DNA from: Chara braunii
Taxonomy: Eukaryota; Plantae; Charophyceae
Assembly (NCBI GenBank): GCA_003427395.1
Contig: BFEA01000015.1
Span: 5,939,027 to 6,003,026, forward strand
DNA length: 64,000 nucleotides
Reading direction: 5' to 3'
Shown: positions 3,275 through 30,351 of the stretch, piece after piece
Layout: each line of letters opens with the position of its first letter
Numbering within the stretch: the first letter of the stretch is position 1
Made by a program: the position numbers and the translations under genes
The notes under the pieces: generated by a model
Databases searched by the model: none
What the model was told of the DNA's origin: nothing
What the model saw: the letters and a program-made list of their open reading frames with translations, nothing else

Positions 3275-6200
3275 TGTCGGGCCGAATACCCCTTACAAGG
3301 GTATTTGGGCACATTTTCGCAGCGCTCAGGAAGGACGGGCCTGACGATATCTGAGGGCGCGCCCCATTTATATTGATTAGAGAGTGTGTGGGCGTGCAGT
3401 TCGTGGGCACGCGTTAGCCTGACCGAGCCAGGGTCGGGGAAGGCCATGCGACGCCGGTAGAACAAGTGTAGGCGGCCGCAGCCTCGCACATACGAGCGAA
3501 GTTACAAGCGGCGTCGCGTTGACCAGGTAGGAGTGTGACTAAAGAGGAGTGTGGTCCGACTTGCGGGGGACCGGCGTATAAAGGCCGTGCCAGGTAAAAG
3601 TTACGTGGGCACTAGGATGCCGCTGCACCAACGATAGTAAAAGTCGCCACGGGTGCTAAGCAAGGGGGGCACTAAGTAGAGCAACAAGCGGGGGTTTCCT
3701 CGACCGAGAGGCGGTAGGCAGGCGTCGTGGCAGGCCATGAGAGGCTCGGCCCGCCGCCCTGCCGTGGTTGAGCCGGCGCGTGTAGTGCGCCAGCGGAGCC
3801 GTGCCTTCAAGATTGCCAAGTATGGCCTTAGGGAGCCAAGGACGCAGGCCGCAGGTGGGAGAAACAGCCTGGGGTACCGTTTGCAGGCCCGGGCTGGCTG
3901 GCCATACTATCCATATGGAGGATTGCGCCTGCTCCACCCAGGCTTGGGCTCAGCCCTATTGGTTACGGTGCCAGACTCTCACCAGGCAGATTCCGGGATC
4001 GAGGCCAGCAGCAAGCGAGGAGGAGCATTATGGAGTGAACCGAGGGGTTGAGGGTCCTGCAGGACTATCCCTTTTGGTTTTGATGAGGGAAGCCAGTCGC
4101 GGGCCCGTGAGGGTAGGACCAGGTACAAACGGTCCCCTCCCCCGTCCCTTTCTTTATGTTTTTTTTTTTTTTTTTTTTCTGAGTTGTATTTTTTTTTTTT
4201 TTTTTTTCTATTTCTACCTTTTTTTTTGTTTTGGGAGGAGGCCCAGTGTCGATGCCGGGACCTGCAGCGAGCCCACCGGCCTAGTTCCGCCACGAACTGC
4301 CGGGGGGGGGCTGTTGTCGAAGTATAGTCCTTTGGAACATCCGTCAAAATTGGAACGGTACCGAGGAGATTAGCATGGCCCCTGCGCAAGGAGGACATGT
4401 ATAAAGCCGGGAGCAGCCCGACGTGTTGATGTTGCTGTGGCATGCGGTGGGCTGCCGGCTGCTGTACGATCCCTCGGCCAAATTGGTCACTGGGCACTGC
4501 GTTGTAGAGGCGGGTGGAGCCCAACACGGCGATCGCTGCGAAGGTGCGAGAAAGAGTAAGGTGCTAAAAGGAGAGACTGTACCTGGACAGGCAAGAGCGT
4601 CGGGTGCAGGTGAGGACGACGGGGAGGACTCGTAAACGGGCAGGGCTGACTGGGTTGAGCTAGCAGGAAGGGCAGAGTGACACAGCGGGAGTGACCATGC
4701 TAGAGCAACAGCAGAAAAAAAAGAAGCAGGGAACGAGCTGTACCTGGACGGGAAACAACGCCGGGTGCAGACGAAGGTGAAGGAGGAGATGGCGGAAGGT
4801 AGCTAGGCAAAAAAAAAAAAAAGAAAAAAAAAAAAAGGAAAAAACGAACTCACCTGTCTCTGAATGGTAGTAGAGGAAGGAGTGGACGAGAGAAAGTTAG
4901 CTTAAGAAAGCGCAGCTCCGGGAGGCGGGAAAAAACTGAAAAACAAAGACAACAAGAGGTGAACCTGGACGCAGATTCGAGCGAGGTACGTTCAAAAGAG
5001 AGAGGGGGAAAGGAGAGTTGGAAGGGATATAACTCGCTCATTCCTAAACGAAATAGAGCGAGCCGGACATTGAACCTGGTGGTTTGGGGGCAGGCGACCA
5101 TGAATCCGAGCTCAGAATTGGACGAGAGTTAGGGAATGGTGAGCTAGATAAGAAATAACGTGCGCGGAGGAGGCCGGGAGCTATGGGGGAGAAGAGGGTA
5201 GTCATCAGATCCTTGGCCGTTTGTGGCAATCTAAGATGGTAAGTGGGGGGTTTGAGGCCTTCTGAAGGCATTGGACGAATCAGAATTGTGATCTGAGCAG
5301 CGGTTTGGGCGGGTGGAGCGCCAGGGGCTGTGCGACTGTGTGAAGCAGCTGAAGATGGTGAATGCATCCTCCCATGTTCAGGCGGGAGATCCATTNTCGT
5401 CNTNCGAGCAACGAAGCGGGCNGACCCTTATGCTGTNCGTTCCTACTCNTAGTTGAGAGCCGTTCTGCTCAGTTTCGCGCCGCCAGCGAGGTCTCCTCTG
5501 ACGACCTTGTTGCTCGTTGCGCTATCATAACCGCCTCNGCCGAGGAAGGGCAGTGACTATGTTATAAGCATNGTTACAAACACTGGTCGAAGTAAAAGCN
5601 GTTTTCCTCCATNAGAACCTGCCCCCAACACTCNTCGGCATCNCAATNTTCNTATGGCATANGGAAGAGAGCCTTGAGGGGGACTTGAGGGGGTGAGGGG
5701 AACTCGGCNACGAAGGAAGCACCAAGGGAGAGGAAGAAAGGTCGGAAGCACATATAAGGAAGGATGGGAGCTGACGGGGGAAAAAGAAGGAGAAGTTGGT
5801 GCATCTGTTGTCGTGGGGAGTCTTCGTANAAAGGGCCGGTNCCGATAGCGCCCGCGGGTGGGGAGCAACTGCCCATCGCCCTGCTGACTTCCGGTGGACC
5901 GATGCACCCGNCCACTTTTCTAGCGGATGGTTCACTCCGAATCCGCTCGTCCAGCAGATGGGAGTGACGCGAGGACCAGTGGAAGGGTTGGAAGCTTACT
6001 TGTTGACCTCGGGCAGTCGGATGCCGAGAGGAAGGCAGGGGAATACGTACCTGGACCTCTTCTGCAGGAAGGTCCACTCTCGTCCCTGCCGTTAGTAGGT
6101 GGCAGTTGCGGCCCAATCCTGATATTCCGGCATCTCGGTTGTCCCGGAATGGTCGAAGTTTCACCTTCGACAGACCACGCTGGGTCATGTGCACTAGAGA

Positions 6201-8945
6201 AGGGAGGTTGGGCTTCCCGGTGTTGCAGGGGTGCTTTTGCTAATTCGGTTGTTGTGCCCTTTGCTGCCGCAGAGACGGCCAAATGGAGGTCTGGTAAGTA
6301 GGGTGTTCAGAGAGTGGCTGCGCCTCACGGTACCACAGCTGCGGTTCCAGCTACCGCGACCTTCTTGCTTGGCCCCTGCTGTCGGTGCTGATCCACGCTG
6401 CAGCAACTATCACCAGACAGAAGAGGAGGAGGGAAGATCTATCTGGTGGGCTGTGGGGTCATAATTTCTTTGACGTGCTGCTTATAATTGTTGAAGGGGT
6501 GGAAGTTATCGGACTATTGCTGCATGTGCGCCAGGGCCCTAGATTTCTCGTCCAGACACAGAAGCGGGGTGTCTTGGGTGTTGCAGTCCCAAACCCTATA
6601 GACTGGCATACCAGCGAAGGCGGCTGCTACGGGCTGCTCCTGACTTGCTGGATGGTAGTTGGACCATCTGAGGTAAGCACTGTACACAATGCTGACTGTG
6701 TACTGCTGTGCTACTGGGCATCCTGCCTCAAGCGGCATACGGGCTATTCTGGTGCACAACATTGGAAGGGTTTTGGTGAACTCCTGACTGTCACGATGCC
6801 ATCGATGTGACTGCTGAAACGTGGGCTACTACACTACATTTCCGTTGTGTATTGTTGGGTCTCGAATAGGCTACGAAGCTGTATCAAAATTAAACCCGGA
6901 CCTGTCTGCCAGTGACTGCCACATTCAACAACGTCACATANTTGGACAAGCTTGATGAAGAGAGAGAGTGTCTGCGACATGAATGTGGAATGTTTTTCGT
7001 CCTTCAAGTCTGATCCGATTAATTGAGTAGTGTGGGCTNGCTTCTGACAGCCTGTGTGTGTGGACCGTGGTGGGCTGTTTTTCTTTCTCCCCCCTCCCCT
7101 CGTGAGTGGAGTGGCGGTANTTACCTNAGGCAGCATGGTCCGTAATCACATCAGAAATTTNTTTTAATAGGTNTGTTCGCTGCGGTGTATCTGCCTATCT
7201 CTTNNTGGAAGATTCCCTCTCATATTGCATAACTGACAGGCCGGATAGACTGGGCACCTCCAAAAGCTATAACTAGAACTGAAGGAATAGGGGAGAGNGG
7301 AGGAGACTCCCAAAAATTTAGGTGGAAGTGTTGACGACGAGGGTGGGACTCTTGGAAATTCTTGGTGCCAATTGACTTGGGGAGAGACAGTAGTTAGATC
7401 TAATTTTTGTTACAGATTGTACTTTCGACGTTAAGTGCACCCGCTGTGTACCCTCGTCGCCAGGCTCAGGTGGCAGTGCCCCTCATGATTGTTATCTTGA
7501 ATCCCAACCTTGCCTCATTGGGACTGTCACAAGGAGGATCACTATCTTTGACCTGAGCTGGTGGGCCAGCTAAGTGGTGAGTACTAGGTAGCTGGCATGA
7601 GTGCTTGGTGTAGTGCTACTGCAGGCCGCGGGGTCTATTCGGTGGCAATACATCTGTAATCGGGACTGATCAGTGAGTTGCTGCTGTCTAAGTATTGTAG
7701 ATAAGTAATATATATATATTTTTTTCTTTCCTTTTTTTTTCTTTTTTTTCCTGATATCTTGATGTAGGCCGCAGTTCCAGCATTGGCCTGTTACTAAGGA
7801 CAGTGCGGTGTTAGAGGCCAAGACAGAGGCAGGGGTTTTGAAGGGCACTGCTTAGACTTGAAGGGGTGTTTGTCTTAGCGGCAGCGACTGCCATCACCAA
7901 GGGCCACTGTTTTTTCTAAGAGCGGTACAGCAGGGCAGCGAGCTGTCAGACTGCTGCTGTAAGGCTACTGTACTACTGAGTTGCTGCTCCAGTACTTCGG
8001 TGTGTTCCAACTGTGTACCACTGTGGGTTACCAAGCCCCCGTTGAAGTGCACTGTATACTATGGCCAGTTGGGGGAGTCAGGAAGCCGNTGTAGGTCACT
8101 GAGGTTCGGACTATTGCAAGTACAGCCCCCTCTCTCAATCTACGGGGGCAGTAGCGACCCATTTTCGATATCATCAATAGGGTCGTTCACCGTCCGCCTT
8201 GTCGCCAGGCCCGACAAGTCGTGGTGCCACCCTAGCGGGCGGTACACTATCACGCTGATTATATGNGATCGCTGCGAGGAAACCAGTCTGTTGGAAATCG
8301 ACGGCGACTATTGCATTGAGTAAAGCCAGGGTGTGCTCTGTTCAAACGTAGCATTCTTGTGACTCAGAGCAGNAGTTCGGACGGAGGGGGACCACCGGGA
8401 GGTGGCGGTTCCCAGCAGCAGGCTGTGGGGAGTTTTTGGGTAGCTGCTGTAGCATCTTTGTTGGAAATATTACAGTAGCTACCACTACTGTTGAAAAGAG
8501 CTGCGGAGCCACCTTGTGTTAGGCCTGGTATGCTGCTGTAGTTTCGCTGAAGGGTTTCGCTGTGCGCGTGGTTGTCCACTAGCTCTACACGACTGTGTAC
8601 TGAGGAACGGGGGCAGCCATAGCACCAGGACTGTGGCCTCCAGAGGCTGGGGGCTGTATAAGCGTTAAGAGTGCTATAGTGGATTAGTTACCAGCGTTGT
8701 TGCAGGTTATAGCTGTGTTGTGCACCATTCTGAACGCTGCCGCAGTGCAGGGCGTTGTTCGGCACTGCTGTCGTGCAGAGCACTACTCATTGTTGTGCGC
8801 CATTCCTGTTCGTTCTTACGGCGGGGTCGTTACGGCGACTAAGGAGGTTGGCAAGGGACTGTCATTCTACATTTTGGCCGCAAGTTGGACACCTTCACTG
8901 CGCTACTGGCCACCATTGCGGGGCCCTCAGGCGTATCGAGATGAC

Positions 8946-9166
8946 GAGGCCCTCTCACTGTGAGTTGAGTGCACCTCTCTTGGATCTCGAGAGTCTGACT
9001 TTTCTTTCGCTATCCTTCTNAGTCTAAGTNTGGTCTTTGGTTACGAGAGGAAGGCGGCAGGNGGGATTGCAACCCGTAGGACCGCGCCAAGGCCTCTGTG
9101 GGAGGTTGCCCCACCGATTGCGGGAGCTCTGCCGGGACCNAGGCGGGGTTCTNGAGGCAGAGAACT
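8946..9166 (+). ncRNA. Putative structured cis-RNA element in LTR A (copy at 26494-26714, homolog at 31360-31580)
   Basis: Block strongly conserved with the diverged LTR; helices show compensatory changes (GGCCUC/GAGGUU vs AGACUC/GAGUCU; GGGACCN/GGGUUCU vs GGAACUC/GAGUUCU). Confidence 0.6.
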
Positions 9167-9487
9167 TCAAGTATAACCTCGTTAACCCGTGTCATCCCTT
9201 CCCCTATTTGTTATCCCCTGGGTACCTGAATATGTATATGAAAGGCTATTACCTTTTGTTTTGCTATGTATGTCAGGACATGCTTTGCCTAAAGGTGAAA
9301 TGAACATGTACATATGAGAGATCAGATAACTCTTGAGCGAATTCAGACAGAATGAACAGGGGGAAGGTGGGAGAAAGATGGTTGCATGTGTTTGACCGGG
9401 TCAACCCAAGGTTGAGCTCCTCTTAGCTGATGTGGGCTCAGTGCTGTGTTTTGTTTATGTTTGCTGGGCTGCTTGTATGGTTTTGAG

Positions 9488-10692
9488 GGCTGGGCCTATC
9501 CTAAGTTGGACGGACCAGCCGCTGTTTTTTTCTGGGGTTTCTGAATAGGAGGATGGGCACCCTAAGTTGGGATGTCTCAGAATCCTGGTGTTTTTTTTCT
9601 ATGGGTTGCTGAAAACAGGACTGGGAACACTGTTAAGTTGTGTGGACTCAGTTCTGCGTGTTTTTTTTTTCTGGGGGGGAGCACCGGCATGAGGCTGAGC
9701 GTACCCTTAAGTTAGGGCGGTTCAGTCATAAGCCACGAACATAATGGTCAATCTCAAGTATACAATTTTGATATATACCATGCGAACCTATACCATCTGG
9801 CAGGCGGGACACCCTAAGTTGGGAAAGCCAGTCAGTAAGTCAGGTAGAACAATAAGAGGAGAAAAGCAATGAAGAATATAATGAAGGTAACCTGGGCAGG
9901 CTGAGCGTACCCTTAAGTTAGGGCGGCTCGGTCCTATGCTCGTAATAAGACAAAGGATCAGCGAGTTAGTATGAACTTGTTTTATTTTTCCTTCTAAATA
10001 CGAGGCAGGGTTGGATGTCTCCCTAAGTTGGGTAGGTCTGATCATCTGTCTAATAAGAGAGAAACACAAAGTTTGTGCATGCATCAATGGTGTGGTTTTC
10101 ATATGATTGTCGTTACGGAGGCTAAGCGTACCCTTAAGTTAGGGCGGCTTAGTCATATGTCGTTGTGCTTTGTTCACGCAGATTCTGTCTTATGTAACTA
10201 TATTGTTTAGGCCAGCCAGGCGTACCCTTAAGTTAGGGCGGCCTGGTGATAGGCTCTTGTCGTTGATGTGATGTTGGTTGGACGTACCCTTAAGTTAGGG
10301 CGGTCTGACCATTCGTCGTTCGTGCTTGTTCTAGGCAGGTTAGGCACACCCCTAAGTTGGGCCGGTCTGACCATTCGTCGTTCGTGCTTGTTCTAGGCAG
10401 GTTAGGCACACCCCTAAGTTGGGGCAGTCTAATCCTATGCCCTATGTAACTTGTGTAAGGCTGGCTAGACATACCCTTTAGTTAGGGCAGTCTAGTCTTA
10501 TGCTTCATGTCGTCAGTATAAGCTGAAGCCAGGCATACCCTTAAGTTAGGGCGATCTGGTCATATGCTTTATGACTAAAGTTTATCTGGAGTTGGGCATA
10601 CCCTTGAGTTAGGGCAGTCCAGTTGTGCGTACCTTGTTTATTTAGGCAGGTTGGACATACCCTTAAGTTAGGGCCTTGTCTGATCCTATGCC
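9488..10692 (+). repeat. Array of 16 stem-loops with TAAGTT loop
   Basis: Loops start at 9502, 9563, 9634, 9708, 9815, 9914, 10024, 10135, 10229, 10291, 10353, 10415, 10478 (TTAGTT), 10542, 10605 (TGAGTT), 10664. Most are closed by CCC(T)/(A)GGG above a variable but pairing lower stem. Confidence 0.9.
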
Positions 10693-12805
10693 ATAAGTGA
10701 GGGGGTTATTGAAAGGGAACAACTGAGTGATCTAACGAACTACCTGGGTAAATGTATGTGGGATTGTGAGAGATGCATGCTCATGTATGATTGTAGGGTC
10801 TCACTTGGGGTGTCTTTTCGATAGGTTAGTTGCTTTAGATGCTCGCCAAGTGCTGGAGCCATAGGTAGGTTAGATGGATGTCGGGAGGGAAACTTGGGAT
10901 GAGGATAGGACTGGCCCTGCAAGGGGTTAGGCCCAANNCTAGCCCATGGTCTCTTCCAGAGGTTGTGTAAGCCGTCATTGATCNTGATTCATCAAGCAGG
11001 CGTCAGTAGTTAGTCCCAAGTGTAGTTGCTTTGTCTTTCTGTTTTTTCAGCTTTGTATAAATCTTGGTAGCCTCCTGTTCCTACTGGAAGCGCTGCCGAA
11101 ATTTTTANAAATCTGAAAGGGTTAGTCATTTTTGGGTCTTAGAAATTATGAAAAGGCACTTTTCCTANGGGAAGCGCTGCCTAAATTTCGTGAAATTTAG
11201 GGAGTTAGAATATTTTTCAGTTAGAAGTTACTTAGCAGATCCTAACTGATTAGAGGAGGTGTTCAACTAATTGGTANTAGTAGAGGAGCTAGAGTACGAC
11301 TAAGGGGAATAATCTCCCCTTGACACAGACGTAAGTACTACTCTTCGTTGGCCTGTACTATGATGCAGGTTGCTGTGCTATCACTTGAGAGCCTGATTTG
11401 ATCAGGTCATTCCTTCAGAGAGATTATTTCTCTGTTACCACTGATAACAGGTCGGTTGCCGAATCGTCGGTCTACGACTCAACCCCAATTCACCCTCAAT
11501 ACTCAGCCTAAAGAGGCTTTAGCCATGGTGATTTTATCTGTTTTGTTAAGGTTTCACCCAGACTTTTATTGAATGGCCATTTAACAGAAGTACTGAGTAC
11601 TTACTTATGGTTGGTTGGCTGGAGGTTGGGGCTTGCATGACTAAAGCACAGGGTATGAGTGGGGAGGTTGGTTGGAGTTGACCCCGTGTTGCGTGGGGAT
11701 CTTTGCTTGATTCTGTGATGTGATTGCAGGTATGTATGGAAGAGTATCATCTGAGTTATGTTGAGTGATCGTGTCTTGGATTGAGATGGGCAAACCACAT
11801 AACTGTCGTGAGAGTGAACTACCCCACAACTTGGTGTTTGAGTAAGAGGGTTTTATTCCCGTTTTGCTGAAGTGGTAACCTATGTAAGTGTACGTTCGGG
11901 TAACCTCTACAGGGCTAGTCCCGACAAGGCCTCGTCTAATGAGATTAGGGGTACATATGTTATCCTTGTTTGAATTTATTTTGGTGGGACGATAAAGATC
12001 CGGGCGGAAGGGTTAGCGTGTCACTGGTGATGCGCCAAACAACTCACCACCGCTCTAAATTCCTTCCTGACCTAGGGGCCGTCTTACCCCGCACCCTTTG
12101 GGGCAACCCTCGAAGTTATCAAGGGCCGCAAGGCTACGAGTACACCAGAGTACCCCATCAGCGCGAATGCTTGCAAATAACCAAATGGCTGGTTGTCATG
12201 AGGAGGCCATGCGCTCGCTCGACTCTTATACGGAAACCCAGCGCGCGACGCCTATCTGGTTCTGTTGCGTAAAAGTATGGGTTGGATACTGAAGGGACTA
12301 GGAGTTGTGGTGTTGTGGCGTTGTTTGTGGCGGCCGTTCTGTGTGTGTTTCTATATGTTATGAGTGGGTAAGTATGAGTATCGTGGTGTAGCGCGTGGTG
12401 AGAGTAGTGCGTCCTGGTCGACCGGCGTCGAATCGTGTCTTTGATTTCAGGCCCTCAGTATGACGACTCGCGCACGGGTTCGATTTCGGGCGTTCGACCG
12501 CGCGTACCCCCTATGCTACAGCGAGCGAGAAACGCCCTCGGCTGGGCCACCTCTGCAATTGCATATGAAAAGCTTTCGTATGTGGTTAAGTAGCTCGGCA
12601 GGGATACACCCTCCTAAGGGATGGTGACAGCTCCCGCAGGTGGAGGTAGCGGTGCCTCGCATGACTCTGTCCTGTCGTAGGGGCTCGCGAGAGGTACGGC
12701 TGGCGCACTCGGCCTGAGCGGCAAACGCTCTCCGCGACAAGTCCTGCATAATCCTGCGTGACGTGGCCGGGAGGGTTTCCGTGCGGGACCGATGCGCTCG
12801 ACAGG

Positions 12806-12825
12806 TGTCGCTGTTGCAAGGGATC
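12806..12825 (+). promoter_or_regulatory. Degenerate primer-binding site (tRNA-Asp type)
   Basis: TGTCGCTGTTGCAAGGGATC, 16/20 match to TGGCGCCGTTGCCGGGGATC (complement of the plant tRNA-Asp 3' end), 2 nt after the LTR. Confidence 0.75.
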
Positions 12826-13140
12826 TCGGATGCCTACCGGGGTCTTTAAGAGAACGAACCCAAGTTAAGTGCAGGCTGATGACCTAGGCAAAACGACAAA
12901 GGTTATAGGATGGATTGGCTTATATAAGAGGGATGTATATGAAGTCATAATAAGACTAAGTGGTGTATAGTGCGACTAAAGGTTGTATCTCGGGCGTAAA
13001 TGACTATGGTAGAGCGGTCAGCTAAACTTAGGGGTAGAATGGTCAAGAAGGACGTAGGGCAGACCCTTTAAACTTGACGAACTACTTACCGATCTATCCC
13101 TTGTTTTTCCTGTCAGGTTGGTTAGCAAAAAGAGGTGAAG

Positions 13141-16005
13141 ATGCCGGACGCTGATGAAATCGAGCATGGCCCGGCCGCTACGCCAGAGGATTTCGTCATG
13201 GCACTCGAGAAAAGGGAGTTGGCACGACTTCAAGTGCCGGAAGTTAACATATTCCATTTTAATGGGGACAAAGTATCCGAGTGGTTGGAGCTGCTGGAGC
13301 AGGTTACGGCCGAGGTGCCTGAGGCAGATAAATTCAAGTTCCTACCCAGGTACGTCTGCCGGGAAACTCGGCCCGAGGTAATGAAGGTGGCTGCTGGAGC
13401 AGAAGGAGACTGGGCTAAGTTCAAGGCAGAAATGCAGGGGCGGTTCTAGTTAGGGGATGGCTTGTTAACGAAGACAGATTTGGAGATGTTACAGCGGGAC
13501 GAGTTTTCCACGGTGGGAGCTTTCGCAACGACATTTGAGAAGATGGCCAAGAAAGTCCCCGAATTGGTGGAAGAAGAACAATGTGCCACTTTCCTGGGGC
13601 ACTTCAAGAATTGGGAGGCCTCGTCGCTAACCAAGAAGGCTGCGCTGGGAAAGAAGCTCACTTGGGTCGCCATAAAGGAGGGTGTAATAGAAGGAGAGCT
13701 GGACCAAGTAGACATCTTCCAAATGCGACAGGCTAGGAAGAAAAGAAAGGCCTTGGACGCCACGACGAGCGGCGGGCGAGACTTTAAGAAACTGATAGAA
13801 GATGCAGTGGCTCAGCTCGATGCAGAGAAAGAGGCAAAAAGGAAAACTATGGCGGCACCACAGACCCAAGAGAAGGCAAAGAAAGCAGTGGTGCAGGAGG
13901 AAGAAGAAGAGGAAGAGGAAGAGGAGCCTGAGCCACAGAAGTTGACCGAGGCTCAGAGAAAAGCAAGGAACTTGGCTCAAGGGGGGCAAGGCTCAGGAAA
14001 GGGGCAGGTCCCACAAGCTGTAGCCATGCCACCTCCTGAGTCGCCCAGTCAGGCTGCACCAGCTCACTATGGGCCATGGCCAGGTTGTGGACCTTCGAGT
14101 CATTGGCATGGGCACTGTTCATACGCCCCGTGGCGAATGAGCGGACCGCATGGGTCGTGCGCCGGACCATCAGTGAGCGCGGCTTCCTGTGGCTGCTCGG
14201 GACCCCAAGCGCAACAAGTGAGCCACCCGAACCCACCGCCAAACAAACCCCAGCAGTCAGCCCCACAAGGTTCGCAAGGCAATCAAGGGGGTGGGAGTGG
14301 ACAAAACCAAGGGTGGGGCCGAGGACGGAGGAATGGTGGCCGTGGAGGAAATGGTAGAGGAAATGGTGGTGGTAACACTTCAGGTGGCGGAAACGAGGGT
14401 TTGGGGTATTCGGGAGTCAAAGCGGTCAAGAGGGTGGAAGAGGTGCTGGCAGAGGGAGAGTAGACTGGAGAAATGCCATTTGCTGGCATTGTGGGCAGAA
14501 AGACCACACTATTAAGTTCTGCCACGTCAGGAGGAATGACGAGGACAAAGGTTTAATTAGCACCAACTATGATGGAGACATGTACGACAAGTGGGGGTAC
14601 CACCTTGACCCGAAGATTCCAGGCGGGACGAGGAAGGAGGCCCTATGACGAGTCGAGGCAGGTGAACCACCCGCCCCTCCAGCCATGTTTCGGATGTGGC
14701 AGGAGAAAGAGGTCCACATCGACACCAGGGTGGAAGAGGTAGGACAGAACGAGGAGGTAGAGCAAGGAAGGAAAGCTGACACCATCAAGGAGGAGCCAAT
14801 CATAGTAGAGTCGAATGATGAGATTGAAGAAGATTACTGGAACGGGACGTTGCATGCTGAGATAGGGGAAGACTATTGGAGAACGGCCCGACAAACAATG
14901 GAGAGAATGGAGGACCTGATAGACAAAGTCGGGAGATACCAACAAAACTGGCTGATATGTGCGAAGAAGTCGAGGAGTGGCAAGGTAAGGAGCCATCGGT
15001 ATACCTCTAGGACCTAGGTCCGGGACCGCAAGGAGAATCCGGGAATCTACCAAACGTTACGACCTCAGGAGCAACGCCTCGATCAGGCACGACTTTCAGA
15101 CCACCTTCCAGGACGGGGAGGGTACCGTACGCCGTCAGAACGAGGGTTAAAGGGCCAGTGATTCCCGAAGAACCAGCCAAGGATGTTCCTGAACCCAGTA
15201 GAGAGAAAGAGGTAGTGGACGTTCCAGAAGGAGAGGATGACGAAGATGATAGGTTGAGGAAGGAAGAGGATGAGAGGGCCGAGCAAAGGGCCAAGAAGAG
15301 GGGTGTCAGGCCTGATACAGACAAGGCACAAGAAGTAAAGAAGAAGAAGTACGTTGTCCGAGTGGAAGAAGGCTTCGATGTGGAAAAGATAATGGACATA
15401 ATCCTAGAGGGTCATAATCACCTTATGAACCTGAAGGACGTACTAGCCTCAACGCCTAGACTTAGGGATGAGTTAAGAGCAAGAGTATCCAGGAAGATGG
15501 TAGCCAGCATACGATTGGGGATTATAATCCCTAAGGAGGCGGAGGGGGCTGAAACGGGTACTAAGATGGATTGGAAGTCTGTCGTCTGTGGCTGCCTTGA
15601 TGTTGTGGTAAAAGGGAAGACATGCACCGCAATGGTGTACAGTGGAGCGGAAATGAACCTCATAAAGGAGGAACATGCCGTACGACTGGGAATGGAGATA
15701 GACCGCTCTGACAACGGGGTTTTGATGGGGGCCAATAGCCGATCGATATTCATTGGGACCGCGTCATCAGTAATATTGGAAATTGGAAAGGTGAAAGTAA
15801 GGAGCTGCTTCTTTGTGATGCCTAACTTGGACCACCCTATTCTACTTGGGAGATCGTTCCTAAGTCGGACAGAGACGGTCATCCTCAACAAACATGACGG
15901 GACTATGTTCCTCGTCCTGTGTGACCCCGTGTGTGGGAATTACGAGGTCATCACCTGCAAGAACGCAGGACCCAAGAGCGTAAGGAACTGGCCCAACCCC
16001 GGTTC
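13141..16005 (+). pseudogene. gag: gag-protease of element A, disrupted
   Basis: Capsid-like FHFNGDKVSEWLELLE...W; zinc knuckle CWHCGQKDHTIKFC near 14481; protease AMVYSGAEMNLI (catalytic D changed to Y) and ILLGRSFL; stops at ~13447, ~14646, ~15008 plus frameshifts; upstream splice-acceptor-like cttgtttttcctgtcag. Confidence 0.88.
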
Positions 16006-16212
16006 ATGTTGTACGACTCGTCCCTGGAAAAGCAGTGGTCGCGGAAGTTGGAGAAGAGGTGATTGGGGCCTTACAGGGTCACCAAATGTGGTGAACATGG
16101 TGCCTACCAAATCGAAGAGCTGAATGGGACGGCATGGAAGGACTGGGTGTCAGGCTCGAGGCTAAAGAAGTTTGTGGCTCGAGACGAGGTGAGCAGGGAT
16201 CCCACCACTTAA
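16006..16212 (+). pseudogene. Integrase C-terminal (GPY/F) fragment
   Basis: MLYDSSLEKQWSRKLEKR*LGPYRV...GAYQIEELNGTAWKDWVSGSRLKKF, homologous to element B LLYDAVLERTWSGKLANRWMGPYRV...GAYIIVEL; joined directly to the protease region. Confidence 0.85.
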
Positions 16213-16436: not shown

Positions 16437-18725
16437 TTGGGGCAGCCATGCCAAGAGGGAGGGGAGGGGCAGGGCCAGTGGAAACCCCTTTGGGGGAAAA
16501 CCCGACAGAGGACGCAGATGAGGACCTGGAGAGAGGACATGCCTCCAGTCTTCCAGGGAGGGAATATTGAGCTGTTCGTGATGGAGTTCGAGCGGCATGC
16601 GAGAGAGTTTGGATGGGACAGCACCAGGATGTTGAGAGAGGTGCGAGGCACAGGCGAGTGGGCGGACCCTATTGCTAAACTGGTCAGAGAGTNGCTGAGN
16701 TGGCAAGACTTTGGACGGAGGNTGGAGGGTTTGCATNCNTCACCACTGGGAAGGGATGGACNACCCATTCGATTCGACTCCACTAATCTGGGGGAGTTCT
16801 TATGGGCTTATGATCGATATGCGGATGAGCTCTGTATCCCAGGAGAGCAGAGAGTGGGGAGGTTCCTGTTGTTTGTAAGACACGATATCAGACCCTTCGT
16901 ACGATCCATGGTGGCATCTGCCATGAACTGGGGGCACTGCAAGAAGCTGCTATGGAACTATTATACTCCAGCTCGTCAGGCAAGTGAGAGGAGAGGTGTG
17001 GAAAAAAGGAGAAGGGAACCTGAGACAGAGGCGAGGGGAACCTTTGAGCAGGGCTCATCACCAGGGGCTCAGAGGGAGGAAAGGAGGAAGGAACACAAGT
17101 CTCACCGACATGAGAGAGCAGAGGGGTCCGATGGTTCAGATGCACCTCCACAACCTGCTCAGAGGGAGATGGATGGCCCCATGCCTGACGCAGAGTCAAA
17201 CATCCCTCACAAGCCGCATACGCAAGAGCCGAGGGAGGAACCGTCTGTTGATGAAAAGGAGCCGGACAGAGAAGAGAGGGCAGCAAGGGAGCTGGAGATC
17301 AGGACTCAACTCCGAAAGAAGAACCTGGCAAAACTGCATGAGAGGATGCAGTAAGGAAAGGCGCTTGAGGAGGTGGAGGACAGAAAAGGAAAGGGTACCT
17401 GCACTCAGGAGGAAGACCCTCCTCTGTTCTCAGAGGTCTGGATGGGCTTCGATAAGCTGATGGACGCCACACGAAGATCAGGTGGACAACATCAGGAGAT
17501 GGGGGTTAAGTTGGTCTCTACAGACCTGCTCAACCTAAGGAGCGTGATGAGAGAAGGCTTCGCTGCCGCAAGGACCTCAGATCAGAAGATTGGTGACAGG
17601 CTGACAAAGGCGGCACAAAAGGCTTATGGCCAGAGGGTGGACTGGGAGAGAGAGGCTGAGGGCCTGAAGAGGGAGCTGGGAAGACAGGGCAAAGAGTTGG
17701 CAGCAGTAAAGGCGGACATGGAGAGAATCTCAACAGTGAATAAGGCCGTCAGACAAGTCAACCAGACCCTTAACAAGGTCACTGACGCGCTGAGGGCCTA
17801 TTTGTGTACACAACTGACCTTCTTCCAGGTTAAGGAGACTGAGTGGGAGAAAAGGATTCGAGACCTTGAAGCCAAGTATGCCCAACAAGCTTCCACAAGG
17901 GTGGTGGATTGGACAGAGGTCCAGAAGTTCGAAATCAGGGAACAACCTGCAGAGGAGGTCTTCAAGAAGGAAAAGGAAGTGGAGAAGGCAGACCAGCAGG
18001 AGGGTGTGGAGATCCCTCTGATCGACAAAGAGATGTTGGAGCAGCCAGGAGTGCTTGTGGAAAAGGGTGCAGAGGTCGGAGAGTTTGAGTGGAGGTTACC
18101 TGCTCACCTGACACTGGGACACGAGCCGGCAGTACCACAGGAGGGACCACCAGTTGAGGCAATGAGAGCTGAGGAGGTTCCACCTACTATTCGAAAAGAG
18201 ACTGTGGGGCAACAGGAGGGTCAGGAAAGTGTGGGCCAGACCATGGTTGGGACTGAGCGGAGAGTGGACCTGAGGGACTGTCAGGAGTCAACCATGCTTC
18301 AGGAGGTGCCAATTGTTACTGATTTGCGGGATGTACTGGGATCTTGGGCCACTGGGTCTGGGCCAGAGGGGCGTGTTGGGGAGTTGGGGATGCCAGCAGA
18401 TGACAAAGCAGCCTGCCCCGCTTCCTCAGGGGTCCCACAACAGGAGGTTACGAGCAAGATCTCAACAACCCCGTCATCTGTACCCTCGCTGGAAGGAGAC
18501 AAGATGTCCCAGAAGAAGCTTGGCAAGTGTTTTTATTGCAAGAGGGGCAAACATCGATTAGACGACTGCCCCAAGAGCCTCAAGGACGAGGCAAATGGAG
18601 TGTGCACCAGAGAGTCATCGGGGGTATGGAGAGATAGAAATGGATTCCTAGTTCCTAAGACTCGTGATGGGGTGAGGGCGCAGTTGTATAGGCAGCTGCA
18701 GGAGGTCATGAGTGATCAGGAGTAG
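16437..18725 (+). pseudogene. Second Gag-like ORF downstream of pol (two capsid-like repeats, coiled coil, CCHC knuckle), one in-frame stop
   Basis: ORFs 16437-17354 and 17373-18725 are in the same frame; PPVFQGGNIELFVMEFE and PIRFDSTNLGEFLWAYD repeats; CFYCKRGKHRLDDC; polypyrimidine tract and TGCAG acceptor ending at 16424. Confidence 0.8.
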
Positions 18726-20590: not shown

Positions 20591-20663
20591 GCGACGGGGA
20601 CGTCGCTTACTAAGGTCCGGAAAACTGTCGGCCCGAATACCCTTACAAGGGTATTTGGGCACA
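20591..20663 (+). other. Structured module at the 3' LTR boundary in place of a polypurine tract
   Basis: GCGACG-GGGA-CGTCGC hairpin, then TAAGGTCCGGAAAAC, then an LTR-initial fold-back hairpin; equivalent module at 62901-62969. Confidence 0.55.
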
Positions 20664-23600
20664 TTTTCGCAGCGCTCAGGAAGGACGGGCCTGACGATAT
20701 CTGAGGGCGCGCCCCATTTATATTGATTAGAGAGTGTGTGGGCGTGCACTTCGTGGGCACGCGTTAGCCTGACCGAGCCAGGGTCGGGGAAGGCCATGCG
20801 ACGCCGGTAGAACAAGTGTAGAGTTTCTGAGGCGGCCGCAGCCTCGCACATACGAGCGAAGTTACAAGCGGCGTCGCGTTGACCAGGTAGGAGTGTGACT
20901 AAAGAGGAGTGTGGTCCGACTTGCGGGGGACCGACGTATAAAGGCCGTGCCAAGTAAAAGTTACGTGGGCGCTAGGATGCCGCTGCACCAACGATAGTAA
21001 AAGTCGCCACGGGTGCTAAGCAAGGGGGGCACTAAGTAGAGCAACAAGCGGGGTTTCCTCGACCGAGAGGCGGTAGGCAGGCGTCGTGGTAGGCCATGAG
21101 AGGCTCGGCCCGCCGCCCTGCCGTGGTTGAGCCGGCGCGTGTAGTGCGCCGGCGCAGCCGTGCCTTCAAGATTGCCATGTACGGCCTTAGGGAGCCAAGG
21201 ACGCAGGCCGCAGGTGGGAGAAACAACCTGGGGTACTGTTTGCAGGCCCGGGCTGGCTGGCCATACTATCCATATGGAGGATTGCGCCTGCTGCACCCAG
21301 GCTTGGGCTCAGCCCTATTGGTTACGGTGCCAGACTCTCACCAGGCAGATCCCGGGATTGAGGCCAGCAGCAAGCGAGGAGGAGCATTATGGAGTGAACC
21401 GAGGGGTTGAGGGTCCTGCAGGACTATCCCCTTTGGTTTTGCTGAGGGAAGCCAGCCGCGGGCCCGTGAGGGTAGGACCAGGTATAAATGGTCCCCTCCC
21501 TCGTCCCTTTCTTTATGTTTTTTTTTTTTTTTTTTGAGTTGTATTTTTTTTTTTGAGTTGTATTTTTTTTTTTTTCTTCTATTTCTACCTTTTTTTTCTG
21601 GTTTGGGAGGAGGCCCAGTGCCGATGCCGGGACCTGCAGCGAGCCCACCGGCCTAGTTCCGCCACGAACTGCCGGCGGGGGGCTGTTGTCGGAGTATAGT
21701 CCTTCGGGACATCCGTCAAAATTGGAACGGTACCGAGGAGATTAGCATGGCCCCTGCGCAAGGAGGTTATGTATAAAGCCGGGAGCAGCCCGACGTGTTG
21801 ATGTTGCTGTGGCAAGCGGTGGGCTGCCGGCTGCTGTACGGTCCCCCAGCCGAATTGGTCACTGGGCACTGCGCTGTAGAGGCGGGTGGAGCCGAACACG
21901 ACGATAGCTGCGAAGGTGCGAGACAGAGTAAGGTGCTGAAAGGAGAGACTGTACCTGGACACGCAACAGCGTCGGGTGCAGGTGAGGACGGCGACAGTAG
22001 GACAACGGGGAGGACTCGTAAGCGGGCAGGGCTGACTGGGTTGAGCTAGCAGGAAGGGCAGGGTGACACAGCGGGAGTGACCATGCTAGAGCAACAGCAG
22101 AAAAAAAAGAAGCAGGGAACGGGCTGTACCNNNNNNNNNNNNNNNNNNNNNNNNNNNNNNNNNNNNNNNNNNNNNNNNNNNNNNNNNNNNNNNNNNNNNN
22201 NNNNNNNNNNNNNNNNNNNNNNNNNNNNNNNNNNNNNNNNNNNNNNNNNNNNNNNNNNNNNNNNNNNNNNNNNNNNNNNNNNNNNNNNNNNNNNNNNNNN
22301 NNNNNNNNNNNNNNNNNNNNNNNNNNNNNNNNNNNNNNNNNNNNNNNNNNNNNNNNNNNNNNNNNNNNNNNNNNNNNNNNNNNNNNNNNNNNNNNNNNNN
22401 NNNNNNNNNNNNNNNAGGAGTGGAAGAGAGAAAGTTAGCTTAAGAAAGCGCAGCTCCGGGAGGCGGGAAAAAACTGAAATACAAAGACAACAAGAGGTGA
22501 ACCTGGACGCAGTTTCGGGCGAGGTACGTTCAAAAGAGAGAGGGGGAAAGGAGAGTTGGAAGGGATCTAACTTGCTCATTCCTGAACGAAATAGGGTGAG
22601 CCGGACATCGAACCTGGAGGTTCGGGGGCAGGCGACCATGAATCCGAGCTCACAATTGGACGGGAGTTAGGGAATGGTGAGCTAGGTAAGAAATAACGTG
22701 CGCGGAGGAGGCCGGGAGCTATGGGGGAGAAGAGGGTAGTCATCAGATCTCGGCCGTTCCTTGGCCGTTTGTGGCAATCTAAGATGGTAAGTGGGGGTTT
22801 TGAGGCCTTCTGAAGGCATTGGACGAATCAGAATTGTGATCTGAGCAGCGGTTTGGGCGGGTGGAGCGNCAGGGNCTGNGCGACTGTGTGAANCAGCTGA
22901 AGATGGTGAATGCATCCTCCCATGTTCAGGCGGGAGATCCATTNTCGTCNTNCGAGCAACGAAGCGGGCNGACCCTTATGCTGTNCGTTCCTACTCNTAG
23001 TTGAGAGCCGTTCTGCTCAGTTTCGCGCCGCCAGCGAGGTCTCCTCTGACGACCTTGTTGCTCGTTGCGCTATCATAACCGCCTCNGCCGAGGAAGGGCA
23101 GTGACTATGTTATAAGCATNGTTACAAACACTGGTCGAAGTAAAAGCNGTTTTCCTCCATNAGAACCTGCCCCCAACACTCNTCGGCATCNCAATNTTCN
23201 TATGGCATANGGAAGAGAGCCTTGAGGGGGACTTGAGGGGGTGAGGGGAACTCGGCNACGAAGGAAGCACCAAGGGAGAGGAAGAAAGGTCGGAAGCACA
23301 TATAAGGAAGGATGGGAGCTGACGGGGGAAAAAGAAGGAGAAGTTGGTGCATCTGTTGTCGTGGGGAGTCTTCGTANAAAGGGCCGGTNCCGATAGCGCC
23401 CGCGGGTGGGGAGCAACTGCCCATCGCCCTGCTGACTTCCGGTGGACCGATGCACCCGNCCACTTTTCTAGCGGATGGTTCACTCCGAATCCGCTCGTCC
23501 AGCAGATGGGAGTGACGCGAGGACCAGTGGAAGGGTTGGAAGCTTACTTGTTGACCTCGGGCAGTCGGATGCCGAGAGGAAGGCAGGGGAATACGTACCT

Positions 23601-29600: not shown

Positions 29601-30351
29601 CTCTAAATTCCTTCCTGACCTAGGGGCCGTCTTACCCCGCACCCTTTGGGGCAACCCTCGAAGTTATCAAGGGCCGCAAGGCTACGAGTACACCAGAGTA
29701 CCCCATCAGCGCGAATGCTTGCAAATAACCAAATGGCTGGTTGTCATGAGGAGGCCATGCGCTCGCTCGACTCTTATACGGAAACCCAGCGCGCGACGCC
29801 TATCTGGTTCTGTTGCGTAAAAGTATGGGTTGGATACTGAAGGGACTAGGAGTTGTGGTGTTGTGGCGTTGTTTGTGGCGGCCGTTCTGTGTGTGTTTCT
29901 ATATGTTATGAGTGGGTAAGTATGAGTATCGTGGTGTAGCGCGTGGTGAGAGTAGTGCGTCCTGGTCGACCGGCGTCGAATCGTGTCTTTGATTTCAGGC
30001 CCTCAGTATGACGACTCGCGCACGGGTTCGATTTCGGGCGTTCGACCGCGCGTACCCCCTATGCTACAGCGAGCGAGAAACGCCCTCGGCTGGGCCACCT
30101 CTGCAATTGCATATGAAAAGCTTTCGTATGTGGTTAAGTAGCTCGGCAGGGATACACCCTCCTAAGGGATGGTGACAGCTCCCGCAGGTGGAGGTAGCGG
30201 TGCCTCGCATGACTCTGTCCTGTCGTAGGGGCTCGCGAGAGGTACGGCTGGCGCACTCGGCCTGAGCGGCAAACGCTCTCCGCGACAAGTCCTGCATAAT
30301 CCTGTGTGACGCGGCCGGGAGGGTCCCCGTGCAGGACCGATGCGCTCGACA
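20626..30351 (+). repeat. 3' LTR of element A (contains N gap 22131-22415)
   Basis: Begins TGTCGG, ends GCGCTCGACA; direct repeat of 3275-12803. Confidence 0.9.
27036..28240 (+). repeat. Second copy of the 16-hairpin array (3' LTR)
   Basis: Matches 9488-10692 at offset +17548. Confidence 0.9.

What the first reader, a model, noticed from the sequence alone, without database searches (positions are those of the whole stretch)
9488..10692. CRISPR-looking array of 16 covarying RNA stem-loops with a fixed UAAGUU loop inside a retrotransposon LTR
Seen: typical unit is lower stem (~8 bp), 3-4 nt bulge (GUA/AUA/ACA), CCCU, UAAGUU, AGGG, 2 nt, lower stem. Lower stems differ between units yet still pair: GGCUGAGC/GUUCAGUC, GGCUGAGC/GCUCGGUC, GGCUAAGC/GCUUAGUC, GCCAGGC/GCCUGGU, GGUUGGAC/GUCUGACC, GGUUAGGC/GUCUAAUC, GGCUAGAC/GUCUAGUC. 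Non-WC pairs are mostly G-U on the + strand. Spacers are mostly unique; loop spacing is 59-74 nt at the ends and 94-111 nt in the middle. Neutral tandem decay would not keep pairing while erasing spacer similarity. Inference: a selected multivalent protein-binding array (a natural MS2/PP7-like cassette) for packaging, capsid nucleation, export or silencing evasion. I know no described equivalent in plant or algal LTR elements.
Basis: partly seen in the sequence, partly recalled or inferred. Interest (0 to 1): 0.92.

Follow-up and report, generated by a model that had tools for sequence, protein, structure and literature searches.

The report
Stem-loop array in algal retrotransposon LTRs
The giant terminal repeats of a Chara braunii (green alga) retrotransposon carry a conserved row of about 17 small RNA-type hairpins, all showing the same six-letter loop on stems that differ yet still pair, which looks like a natural multi-site docking platform on the element's RNA; its binding partner and function are untested.

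Summary
There are 16 hairpin units plus one degenerate unit at 9406-10692. An identical copy lies at 26954-28240. Both sit in the 9.5-kb LTRs of a defective Ty3/gypsy-type element of Chara braunii.

- **Unit structure:** a variable lower stem, a small internal loop, a 3-4 bp upper stem and the loop UAAGUU.
- **Selection for pairing:** covariation is supported by shuffles, by slid controls and by my own tree-aware null.
- **Conservation:** ten other genomic loci carry homologous arrays in the same LTR position. Units are positionally orthologous. Lower stems diverge as fast as spacers but keep pairing. Loops and upper stems are conserved.
- **Sister family:** it keeps AUAAGUU in 17 of 18 units on stems of many different complementary sequences.
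- **Loop switches:** whole arrays have changed loop by lineage (UAGGUU, AGGGUU, UAAGAU), and one distant family carries a different apical module.

This argues for a cis-acting structured RNA array read by a common trans factor. My best guess is an element-encoded CCHC zinc-knuckle protein (Gag nucleocapsid or the extra gag-like ORF) that marks genomic RNA for packaging.

Not shown: transcription, protein binding, function. The G-U strand bias is largely compositional. The array is not CRISPR and matches no Rfam family.

The parts
3275..12803 (+). 5' LTR (9.5 kb), starts TGTCGG, ends CGACA
   Evidence: Self-BLAST gives 94-99.5% identity to 20626-30351.
20626..30351 (+). 3' LTR
9406..10692 (+). 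Hairpin array in the 5' LTR: units u00-u16
   Evidence: Covariance model R1 hits, single-unit folds and pair counts.
9406..9450 (+). u00, degenerate unit; loop position 9423-9428 reads TTAGCT
   Evidence: R1 gives 13.3 bits, E 0.56. The orthologous unit has an intact loop in other copies.
9484..9528 (+). u01, loop 9502-9507
   Evidence: 34.9 bits.
9547..9589 (+). u02, loop 9563-9568
   Evidence: 34.0 bits.
9615..9660 (+). u03, loop 9634-9639
   Evidence: 35.1 bits.
9689..9734 (+). u04, loop 9708-9713
   Evidence: 53.7 bits.
9799..9841 (+). u05, loop 9815-9820
   Evidence: 36.5 bits.
9895..9940 (+). u06, loop 9914-9919
   Evidence: 59.9 bits.
10005..10050 (+). u07, loop 10024-10029
   Evidence: 46.3 bits.
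10116..10161 (+). u08, loop 10135-10140
   Evidence: 57.5 bits.
10210..10255 (+). u09, loop 10229-10234
   Evidence: 52.4 bits.
10272..10317 (+). u10, loop 10291-10296
   Evidence: 50.7 bits.
10334..10379 (+). u11, loop 10353-10358
   Evidence: 53.3 bits.
10396..10441 (+). u12, loop 10415-10420
   Evidence: 58.6 bits.
10459..10504 (+). u13, loop 10478-10483 (TTAGTT)
   Evidence: 54.0 bits.
10523..10568 (+). u14, loop 10542-10547
   Evidence: 50.0 bits.
10586..10631 (+). u15, loop 10605-10610 (TGAGTT)
   Evidence: 44.8 bits.
10645..10692 (+). u16, loop 10664-10669
   Evidence: 50.8 bits.
26954..28240 (+). The same array in the 3' LTR; every unit lies at +17548
   Evidence: There are 0 differences in 1341 bases.
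8907..9165 (+). Strongly conserved GC-rich block where homology among all family copies begins; either the promoter-proximal region or the first leader exon
9171..9176 (+). GTATAA in an invariant AACTTCAnGTA context, about 230 nt upstream of u00; either a TATA box or a 5' splice site
   Evidence: The assignment is an inference.
12806..12823 (+). Primer-binding site, 2 nt after the LTR end; diverged in this copy
   Evidence: The alignment with other copies shows a TGGCGCC-type PBS.
13098..13116 (+). Pyrimidine tract plus CAG, 25 nt before the gag ATG (13141); a probable 3' splice site of a leader intron
   Evidence: It is conserved in all families, including L008. The assignment is an inference.
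13135..14609 (+). gag, with an in-frame stop at 13447-13449 and the CCHC nucleocapsid knuckle in another frame at 14412-14609
15158..16123 (+). Aspartyl protease; RT, RNase H and integrase are missing after about 16005
   Evidence: Pfam. RT_RNaseH and Integrase_H2C2 are found in L007.
16437..18725 (+). Extra gag-like ORF (one in-frame stop): helical N-terminal domain, long coiled coil, CCHC knuckle
31862..32526 (+). Remnant array of a sister family: six units with loop UAAGAU

Best explanation
The array is a selected, cis-acting set of RNA hairpins carried by the retrotransposon's full-length (+ strand) transcript.

Each unit is a scaffold: a stem whose sequence is free as long as it pairs, displaying one conserved apical motif (UAAGUU in this family). 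About 17 copies of that motif form a multivalent docking platform for one trans-acting reader.

The most likely reader is an element-encoded CCHC zinc-knuckle protein, either the nucleocapsid part of Gag or the extra gag-like ORF at 16437-18725. Binding would mark and nucleate the roughly 18-kb or longer genomic RNA for packaging into virus-like particles.

Diversified stems and spacers would keep the hairpins folding locally and protect the array from repeat-mediated deletion during reverse transcription.

**Shown:** the array, its conservation, pairing kept by compensatory change, loop constraint, and array-wide loop switches.

**My confidence by layer:** hairpin structure under selection 0.9; acts as + strand RNA 0.75; protein platform 0.6; packaging specifically 0.35. 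The confidence figure given for this explanation (0.45) is for the statement as a whole.
For: **(1) Covariation.**
- Window units, MAFFT alignment: 11 pairs with double changes against 5.7 +/- 1.5 in shuffles. Paired cells are 82%, against 24-53% when partners are slid.
- 124 distinct units from 8 sources: 260 double-change cells against 86 +/- 16 in shuffles. The loop-closing pair is U-A in 70 units and C-G in 46.
- My tree-aware null with substitution shuffling: 5 of the 6 top-scoring pairs among all 1035 lie in the proposed structure. Four pairs reach E < 0.05 in the 15-pair test.

**(2) Rates.** Between copies, lower stems are 0.83 identical, much like spacers at 0.82, yet about 87% of lower-stem cells are paired. 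Upper stems and loops are 0.91 identical.

**(3) Spread and order.** Model R1 finds arrays in L001-L008, L010 and L011. Within the element they share its + orientation. Alignment of eight arrays from seven sources shows the units in the same order.

**(4) Sister family on the L010 minus strand.** It has 18 units with the same spacing plan. The loop AUAAGUU is kept in 17 of 18 units. Twelve different upper-arm pairs occur. 95.5% of cells are paired against 68% in shuffles. One pair shows all four Watson-Crick types.

**(5) Array-wide loop switches while unit-specific stems and spacers stay orthologous.**
- UAGGUU in 18 of 18 units of L003 and 16 of 17 units of L006.
- AGGGUU, or C-GGGU-G, throughout the L010 plus-strand array.
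- UAAGAU at window 31862-32526.
- A different apical module on the same scaffold in L008.

**(6) Candidate readers in the element.** Two CCHC knuckle proteins are encoded. From established knowledge, retroviral nucleocapsid knuckles bind exposed G in hairpin loops, and the loop G is invariant across the UAAGUU-derived variants.

**(7) Retained in a defective copy.** The window copy lacks RT and integrase but keeps the array.

**(8) Precedent.** Repeated structured motifs serve as packaging signals in ssRNA viruses (abstract of PMC8206606).
Against: - There is no transcript, structure-probing or binding evidence.
- The start site is unknown, so U3 cannot be told from R or U5.
- The array lies inside the LTR, 2.1 kb upstream of the PBS. 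Retroviral packaging signals lie between the PBS and gag.
- The strand signal is weak: the + strand energy advantage equals that of control windows.
- Among orthologous units, recent changes include pair-breaking ones (WC to A-C 15 against WC to G-U 23). This is as expected if many genomic copies are decaying.
- A global minimum-energy fold keeps only 9 of 16 hairpins.
- The zinc-knuckle sequences do not visibly switch together with the A-to-G loop change.
- Short-tract gene conversion could contribute to the array-wide loop changes.
- Both LTRs carry single-base N at the same offsets, which suggests an assembly consensus of multiple copies.
Confidence: 0.45

Rival explanations
1. The array is an RNA element for nuclear export, stability or splicing control of the unspliced genomic RNA, working like Rev-RRE or CTE. 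It would sit in a leader intron and recruit an export adaptor so that intron-containing RNA leaves the nucleus.
For: - A pyrimidine tract plus CAG lies 25 nt before the gag ATG and is conserved in all families.
- An invariant GTA follows a conserved block upstream of the array and could be a splice donor.
- If so, the array lies only in unspliced RNA, as RRE and CTE do (established knowledge).
- BARE elements use distinct spliced and packaged RNA pools (PMC3735527).
Against: - The splice sites are only motif-level inferences, and GTATAA could equally be a TATA box.
- Family-specific loops within one host genome argue against a fixed host export factor.
- No Rev-like ORF was recognised.
Confidence: 0.15
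2. The array is a DNA-level set of protein-binding sites, acting as an enhancer, an insulator or a telobox-type site, like the 12 Su(Hw) sites of Drosophila gypsy. The conserved core would be read in double-stranded DNA and the stems would be incidental.
For: - The conserved core is compatible with a sequence-specific DNA-binding site.
- Some units contain CCCTAA or TTAGGG-like strings.
- The array lies just downstream of a strongly conserved block that may be a promoter.
Against: - Arms vary in sequence but stay complementary, which a dsDNA reader does not require.
- The sister family has no TTAGGG or CCCTAA at all, yet keeps the loop.
- About 19% of lower-stem cells are G-U, which would be A-C on the other strand, so cruciforms are disfavoured.
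Confidence: 0.1
3. The array works by RNA-RNA pairing. The loops would pair with a host RNA such as the U1 snRNA 5' end (UAAGU is the core of the 5' splice-site consensus). They would act as decoy sites that suppress premature polyadenylation or splicing across the giant LTR.
For: - UAAGU is complementary to ACUUA of U1 (established knowledge).
- UAGGU would still pair through a wobble.
- The element has very long non-coding stretches.
Against: - AGGGUU, UAAGAU and the L008 module lose complementarity.
- Six-nucleotide loops are poor pairing partners.
- There is no complementary motif array in cis: AACTTA occurs once in 27 kb.
Confidence: 0.07
4. The array helps reverse transcription. If it lies in R, the hairpins and their cDNA complements would nucleate minus-strand transfer, like TAR and cTAR annealing in HIV-1.
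For: - The units have a TAR-like geometry: a 3-nt bulge, a 4-bp upper stem and a 6-nt loop.
- The array lies in the LTR.
Against: - An R region of more than 1.3 kb would be far longer than usual.
- Identical loops in all units are not needed for R homology.
- Array-wide loop switching is not predicted by this model.
Confidence: 0.06
5. The array is an ordinary retrotransposon-borne tandem repeat, of the hypervariable non-coding repeat kind seen in Ogre elements. It would happen to derive from a palindromic unit and be decaying neutrally.
For: - The 3' units still show 62-64 nt periodicity with 75-93% matches.
- Such repeats are common in plant LTR elements (PMC7004042).
- Another unstructured 91-nt repeat lies in the same window.
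Against: - The array plan and the units are conserved and orthologous across diverged copies.
- There is an excess of compensatory changes.
- Loops are nearly invariant, while lower stems change as fast as spacers.
- Loop switches are coordinated across whole arrays.
Confidence: 0.03

Closest known systems
Repeated stem-loop packaging signals of ssRNA viruses (repetitive structural motifs in coronaviruses; alphavirus nsP1 stem-loops with GGG; dispersed coat-protein hairpins of MS2-like phages)
   Same: Several hairpins display one short conserved loop motif on stems of variable sequence. Capsid protein is thought to bind them multivalently (abstract of PMC8206606; the remainder is my own knowledge).
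   Different: Those signals have 4-8 units or dispersed sites, and lie in coding regions of RNA viruses. Here there are 17-19 tandem units in a non-coding LTR of a retrotransposon, and binding is untested.
Retroviral psi packaging signals bound by the nucleocapsid (HIV-1 SL1-SL4, MLV)
   Same: The system is a retroelement with a Gag protein carrying CCHC knuckles, and the hairpins expose a G in their loops. Psi may be restricted to unspliced RNA, which could also hold here if the inferred leader intron is real.
   Different: Psi lies between the PBS and gag and consists of non-repeated, dissimilar hairpins. This array lies inside the LTR, 2.1 kb upstream of the PBS, and is a repeat of one module.
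HIV-1 TAR and the iron-responsive element (as hairpin geometry)
   Same: The geometry matches: lower stem, small bulge or internal loop, 4-5 bp upper stem and a 6-nt loop. TAR is also LTR-encoded (own knowledge).
   Different: Those are single hairpins (or two) with unrelated sequences and known partners (Tat with cyclin T1; IRP). No relation by descent is implied.
Synthetic MS2/PP7 tagging cassettes
   Same: Tandem hairpins carry a constant protein-binding loop. Newer designs diversify stems and linkers to avoid recombination, and the natural array shows the same pattern.
   Different: Those cassettes are engineered and use phage coat proteins. No cognate protein is known here.
Su(Hw) binding-site array in the Drosophila gypsy 5' UTR
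   Same: About a dozen repeated binding sites lie in the leader region of a Ty3/gypsy element.
   Different: That array consists of dsDNA sites for a host zinc-finger protein, with no stem covariation.
Tandem repeats in non-coding regions of plant LTR retrotransposons (Ogre/Tat; source of satellites)
   Same: Both are tandem repeats inside an LTR element (PMC7004042).
   Different: Those repeats are hypervariable and no conserved structure is reported for them. This array is conserved in plan and shows covariation.

Membership tests
CRISPR array | Near-identical direct repeats with regular spacing and unique spacers of similar length | tested here: not met
   Units are 67% identical on average. 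Spacing runs from 59 to 111 nt and spacers from 13 to 65 nt.
CRISPR array | Prokaryotic or viral genome context with cas genes | tested here: not met
   The host is the eukaryote Chara braunii. The context is an LTR retrotransposon. The doubled motif is absent from the viral and metagenome collections.
LTR retrotransposon, Ty3/gypsy type (the carrier) | Two long direct terminal repeats with TG...CA ends | tested here: met
   3275-12803 and 20626-30351, running from TGTCGG to CGACA.
LTR retrotransposon, Ty3/gypsy type (the carrier) | PBS next to the 5' LTR; gag, protease, RT, RNase H and integrase in that order | tested here: met
   A TGGCGCC-type PBS lies 2 nt after the LTR in relatives and is diverged here. 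gag and protease are present here. RT, RNase H and integrase are found only in relatives L007 and L011. The window copy is internally deleted.
LTR retrotransposon, Ty3/gypsy type (the carrier) | Target-site duplication | tested here: inconclusive
   The flanks read AACGG and GCGGG, so there is no clean duplication.
Any described RNA family (Rfam 15) | A match to a covariance model | tested here: not met
   The only hits in 3000-31000 at E <= 1 are a U6-like sequence and one chance lncRNA match. Nothing falls on the array.
Retroviral-type packaging signal (psi) | Lies in the genomic RNA leader between the PBS and gag, downstream of the major splice donor | tested here: not met
   The array lies 2.1 kb upstream of the PBS, inside the LTR. 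Its position relative to a splice donor is only inferred.
Retroviral-type packaging signal (psi) | Specific binding by Gag or nucleocapsid and a requirement for encapsidation | not testable with these tools
   CCHC knuckles are present. No binding data can be obtained here.
Structured cis-acting RNA (general) | Base pairs supported by compensatory substitutions beyond what phylogeny explains | tested here: met
Structured cis-acting RNA (general) | Transcribed on the structured strand | not testable with these tools
   No transcript resource was reachable, and protein searches returned genome-derived models only. The strand bias of wobble pairs is weak.
Plant microRNA or siRNA hairpin precursor | A stem long enough to hold a duplex of about 21 nt | tested here: not met
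   The stems total about 12-15 bp and are interrupted by an internal loop.
Neutral retrotransposon tandem repeat or satellite seed | Hypervariable copy number and sequence between related elements, with no structural constraint | tested here: not met
   Unit order and number (17-19) are conserved. Covariation is present.

The most novel reading that the evidence does not exclude
A clade of giant Chara retrotransposons may carry natural MS2-like cassettes: 17-19 hairpins per LTR whose apical motif co-evolves with a family-specific RNA-binding protein. That would give several mutually orthogonal hairpin-protein pairs (UAAGUU, UAGGUU, AGGGUU, UAAGAU, UACUGU) within one genome. Specificity switches would be driven by competition between sub-families for packaging. 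If so, this would be the first packaging or identity code described for a plant-lineage LTR retrotransposon, and a source of new orthogonal RNA tags.
Probability: 0.3. Interest if true: 0.85.

Novelty: new variant of a known kind. Interest (0 to 1): 0.72.

Why it matters
How LTR retrotransposons of the plant lineage select their genomic RNA for packaging is essentially unknown. These elements make up most of many plant genomes.

This array offers a concrete, easily mutated candidate cis element with natural specificity variants. Cognate against non-cognate binding and mobilisation tests could be designed directly from the sequences.

It also shows an unusual evolutionary pattern: a motif changed in every unit of an array while the units stay orthologous. 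That bears on how multivalent RNA-protein codes evolve.

The natural design (constant loop, diversified stems and spacers) matches what engineers arrived at for stable MS2 and PP7 arrays.

The carrier elements themselves are notable: 9.5-kb LTRs, a captured U6-like sequence and a second gag-like ORF.

Tried and rejected
- **Rfam scan of the element:** no family matches the array.
- **Public collections:** a doubled-core pattern search in the metagenome and viral collections found nothing. A Gag-based locus search in metagenomes also found nothing. In the data I could reach, the family is seen only in Chara braunii.
- **Strand test by folding energy:** the + strand is more stable, but control LTR windows show the same bias. 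I rejected it as evidence.
- **Orthologue-based event count:** WC to G-U 23 against WC to A-C 15 is not significant.
- **Complementary motif array in cis (kissing partner):** none found.
- **Co-variation of the CCHC knuckle sequences with the A-to-G loop switch:** uninformative.
- **AlphaFold model of the extra gag-like ORF:** mean pLDDT is 46.8 and only the coiled coil is confident, so I ran no fold search.
- **PDB and Pfam searches on that ORF:** nothing beyond a weak zinc-knuckle match.
- **Consensus fold of the conserved block upstream of the array:** too conserved to show covariation.
- **Transcript evidence:** protein-database hits were all genome-derived models.
- **Target-site duplication:** not clean.
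- **Readings rejected on anatomy:** CRISPR, microRNA precursor, telobox-only.
- **Restraint:** ORFs interrupted by stops were searched as separate pieces.
Full report
**What is there**

The region 9406-10692 holds 17 tandem units: 16 with the loop T[A/T/G]AGTT and one degenerate unit, u00.
- The 14-nt core occurs 20 times in the window, all on the + strand. Shuffles give 0.41 expected.
- Loop-to-loop spacing is 59-74 nt at both ends and 94-111 nt in the middle.
- Each unit folds as an outer 3-bp stem, an 8-bp lower stem, an internal loop (3 nt opposite 2 nt), a 3-4 bp upper stem and a 6-nt loop.
- The same array recurs without a single difference at 26954-28240.

**Context**

Self-comparison shows two 9.5-kb direct repeats, 3275-12803 and 20626-30351, with TG...CA ends.

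Between them lie:
- gag, with a weak Retrotrans_gag match and a CCHC knuckle;
- an aspartyl protease;
- a second gag-like ORF with a long coiled coil and a CCHC knuckle.

All 27 homologues of that second ORF and all 10 homologues of Gag are Chara braunii proteins.

Relatives carry RT, RNase H and integrase in the Ty3/gypsy order. The window copy lacks them, has a stop and a frameshift in gag, and has a diverged primer-binding site. It is a defective member of a family of giant elements.

Both LTRs carry single-base N at the same offsets. Their near-identity therefore probably reflects assembly consensus rather than youth.

**Is the pairing selected?**

*Within the window (MAFFT alignment, not fitted to structure):*
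- 82% of cells pair, against 74% in shuffles and 24-53% with partners slid.
- 11 of 15 pairs show double changes, against 5.7 +/- 1.5 in shuffles.

*Across copies:*
- A covariance model built from these units finds 178 matches at E <= 1, all but one on the + strand. Arrays appear in each of seven loci fetched around homologous proteins.
- On 124 distinct units, double-change cells number 260 against 86 +/- 16 in shuffles.
- The loop-closing pair alternates between U-A (70 units) and C-G (46 units).

*Tree-aware null:* shuffles ignore relatedness, so I wrote an R-scape-like null using a tree, parsimony substitutions re-dealt per branch, and a G-test with APC correction.
- Five of the six best-scoring pairs among all 1035 lie in the proposed structure.
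- Four pairs reach E < 0.05 in the structure-given test.

*Other controls:*
- Units fold better than shuffles (z = -2.46), unlike control LTR windows (z = -0.10).
- Spacers within the array are as dissimilar as shuffled sequence.

**Comparative picture**

Aligning eight arrays shows that units and spacers are positionally orthologous, with only a few unit gains and losses.

Identity between copies:

| Region | Identity |
|---|---|
| Spacers | 0.82 |
| Lower stems | 0.83 |
| Upper stems | 0.91 |
| Loops | 0.91 |

Almost all loop differences fall at one position. So the lower stems drift at the background rate but stay paired, while the apex is constrained.

A sister-family array on the minus strand of L010 makes the same point more cleanly:
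- It has 18 units with the same short, long and short spacing plan.
- The loop AUAAGUU is kept in 17 of 18 units.
- Twelve different upper-arm pairs occur.
- 95.5% of cells are paired against 68% in shuffles, and one position shows all four Watson-Crick pair types.

**Array-wide loop switches**

In L003 (18 of 18 units) and L006 (16 of 17) the loop is UAGGUU. In the other copies it is UAAGUU with two single exceptions. The units remain orthologous throughout.

At the arrays' mean divergence of about 0.19, 17 independent hits on the same loop position have a probability below 1e-12. That figure is my own arithmetic from the numbers.

Other lineages differ again:
- The L010 plus-strand array has AGGGUU, or C-GGGU-G, throughout.
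- A remnant array just 3' of the element (31862-32526) has UAAGAU.
- The distant L008 family keeps the scaffold but carries a different apical module with a UACUGU or CAUGGU loop.

One common reader of the loops explains this best. Several specificities coexist in one genome, which favours an element-encoded reader over a fixed host factor. Short-tract gene conversion may contribute and is not excluded.

**Cautions**
The G-U to A-C ratio is 4.1:1 against 1.9:1 expected from the G+T-rich composition. The + strand energy advantage equals that of control windows.
- Recent changes between orthologous units include pair-breaking ones, as expected for decaying copies.
- A global fold keeps 9 of 16 hairpins.
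- The transcription start, the poly(A) site and any splicing are unknown.

Two conserved motifs suggest that the array is transcribed as part of the leader. An invariant GTA lies in a GTATAA motif after a strongly conserved GC-rich block at 8907-9165, and could be a TATA box or a splice donor. A pyrimidine tract plus CAG lies 25 nt before the gag ATG in every family. If the intron reading holds, the array would be present only in unspliced RNA. This is inference.

**Interpretation**

The best-supported reading is a cis-acting array of RNA hairpins that presents about 17 copies of one loop to a trans factor.

I favour packaging of genomic RNA by a CCHC knuckle protein of the element, for three reasons:
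- known nucleocapsid-hairpin recognition offers a direct analogy;
- repeated structured packaging motifs are known in RNA viruses;
- the array is retained in an internally deleted copy.

Export or splicing control, DNA-level binding sites, U1-type RNA pairing, help with strand transfer, and neutral repeat decay are rivals in falling order. The last is largely refuted.

**Status and novelty**

The array is not CRISPR and matches no Rfam family. Literature searches found no description of such an array. The Chara genome paper itself was not in the library.

I file it as a new variant of a known kind, namely the cis-acting structured RNA elements of retroelements and RNA viruses.

Noticed in passing
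window 4327-4428 and 21699-21800 (+); also L001 16817-16919, L003 14888-14994 and 15130-15229, L007 21551-21651: A U6 snRNA-like sequence (Rfam RF00026, 49-72 bits) sits about 1 kb into the LTR and is conserved across family members. Its ACAGAGA box is altered. It looks like a captured snRNA module, reminiscent of the 5S sequences in Cassandra TRIM LTRs.
   Followed up: partly
window 3275-12803 and 20626-30351: The LTRs are 9.5 kb long, which to my knowledge is exceptionally long. Only the first 1.1 kb or so and the last 3.9 kb (from about 8907) are shared with other family copies. The middle 4.5 kb is lineage-specific.
   Followed up: partly
window 16437-18725 (+): A second gag-like ORF lies downstream of the integrase position. 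It has a helical N-terminal domain, a confident helix of about 130 residues (coiled coil), an acidic or disordered region and a CCHC knuckle. It is conserved in all family members, and its homologues were found only in Chara braunii.
   Followed up: partly
window 9171-9176 and 13098-13116: Two conserved motifs could define a leader intron of about 3.9 kb that contains the array and the PBS: an invariant GTA after a conserved block, and a pyrimidine tract plus CAG 25 nt before the gag ATG. The first motif could instead be a TATA box.
   Followed up: partly
window 31862-32526 (+): This is a remnant of a sister-family LTR with six hairpin units of loop UAAGAU. One neighbouring unit (about 32400) has its apex deleted down to an L008-like remnant. 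Sequence downstream to about 33260 is homologous to the L008 LTR.
   Followed up: partly
L010 7600-8720 (+) and 20365-21556 (-): Two further arrays lie in this locus. One has loops changed array-wide to AGGGUU or GGGU and is cut off at 8720 by an inverted LTR end. The other is an 18-unit array with an invariant AUAAGUU loop on continuous stems.
   Followed up: yes
window 38055-39868; 39868-40907 and 62937-63995: About 20 copies of a 91-nt tandem repeat show no fold signal on either strand. They abut direct repeats 23 kb apart (90% identity), probably the LTRs of another giant element.
   Followed up: partly
window 5396-11277 and 22944-28825: Single-base N calls occur at the same offsets in both LTR copies. 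The first 1.5 kb of the LTRs is only 94% identical while the rest is 99.5% identical. This suggests consensus or collapsed assembly of a multi-copy repeat.
   Followed up: no
window 9484-9680: The first three units are each followed by a run of 7-10 T and then G-rich sequence, and this is conserved between copies. The meaning is unknown.
   Followed up: no
L009 20740-21197: A satellite-like tandem repeat of about 24 nt lies at the end of the locus next to an assembly gap. It is unrelated to the hairpin units.
   Followed up: no
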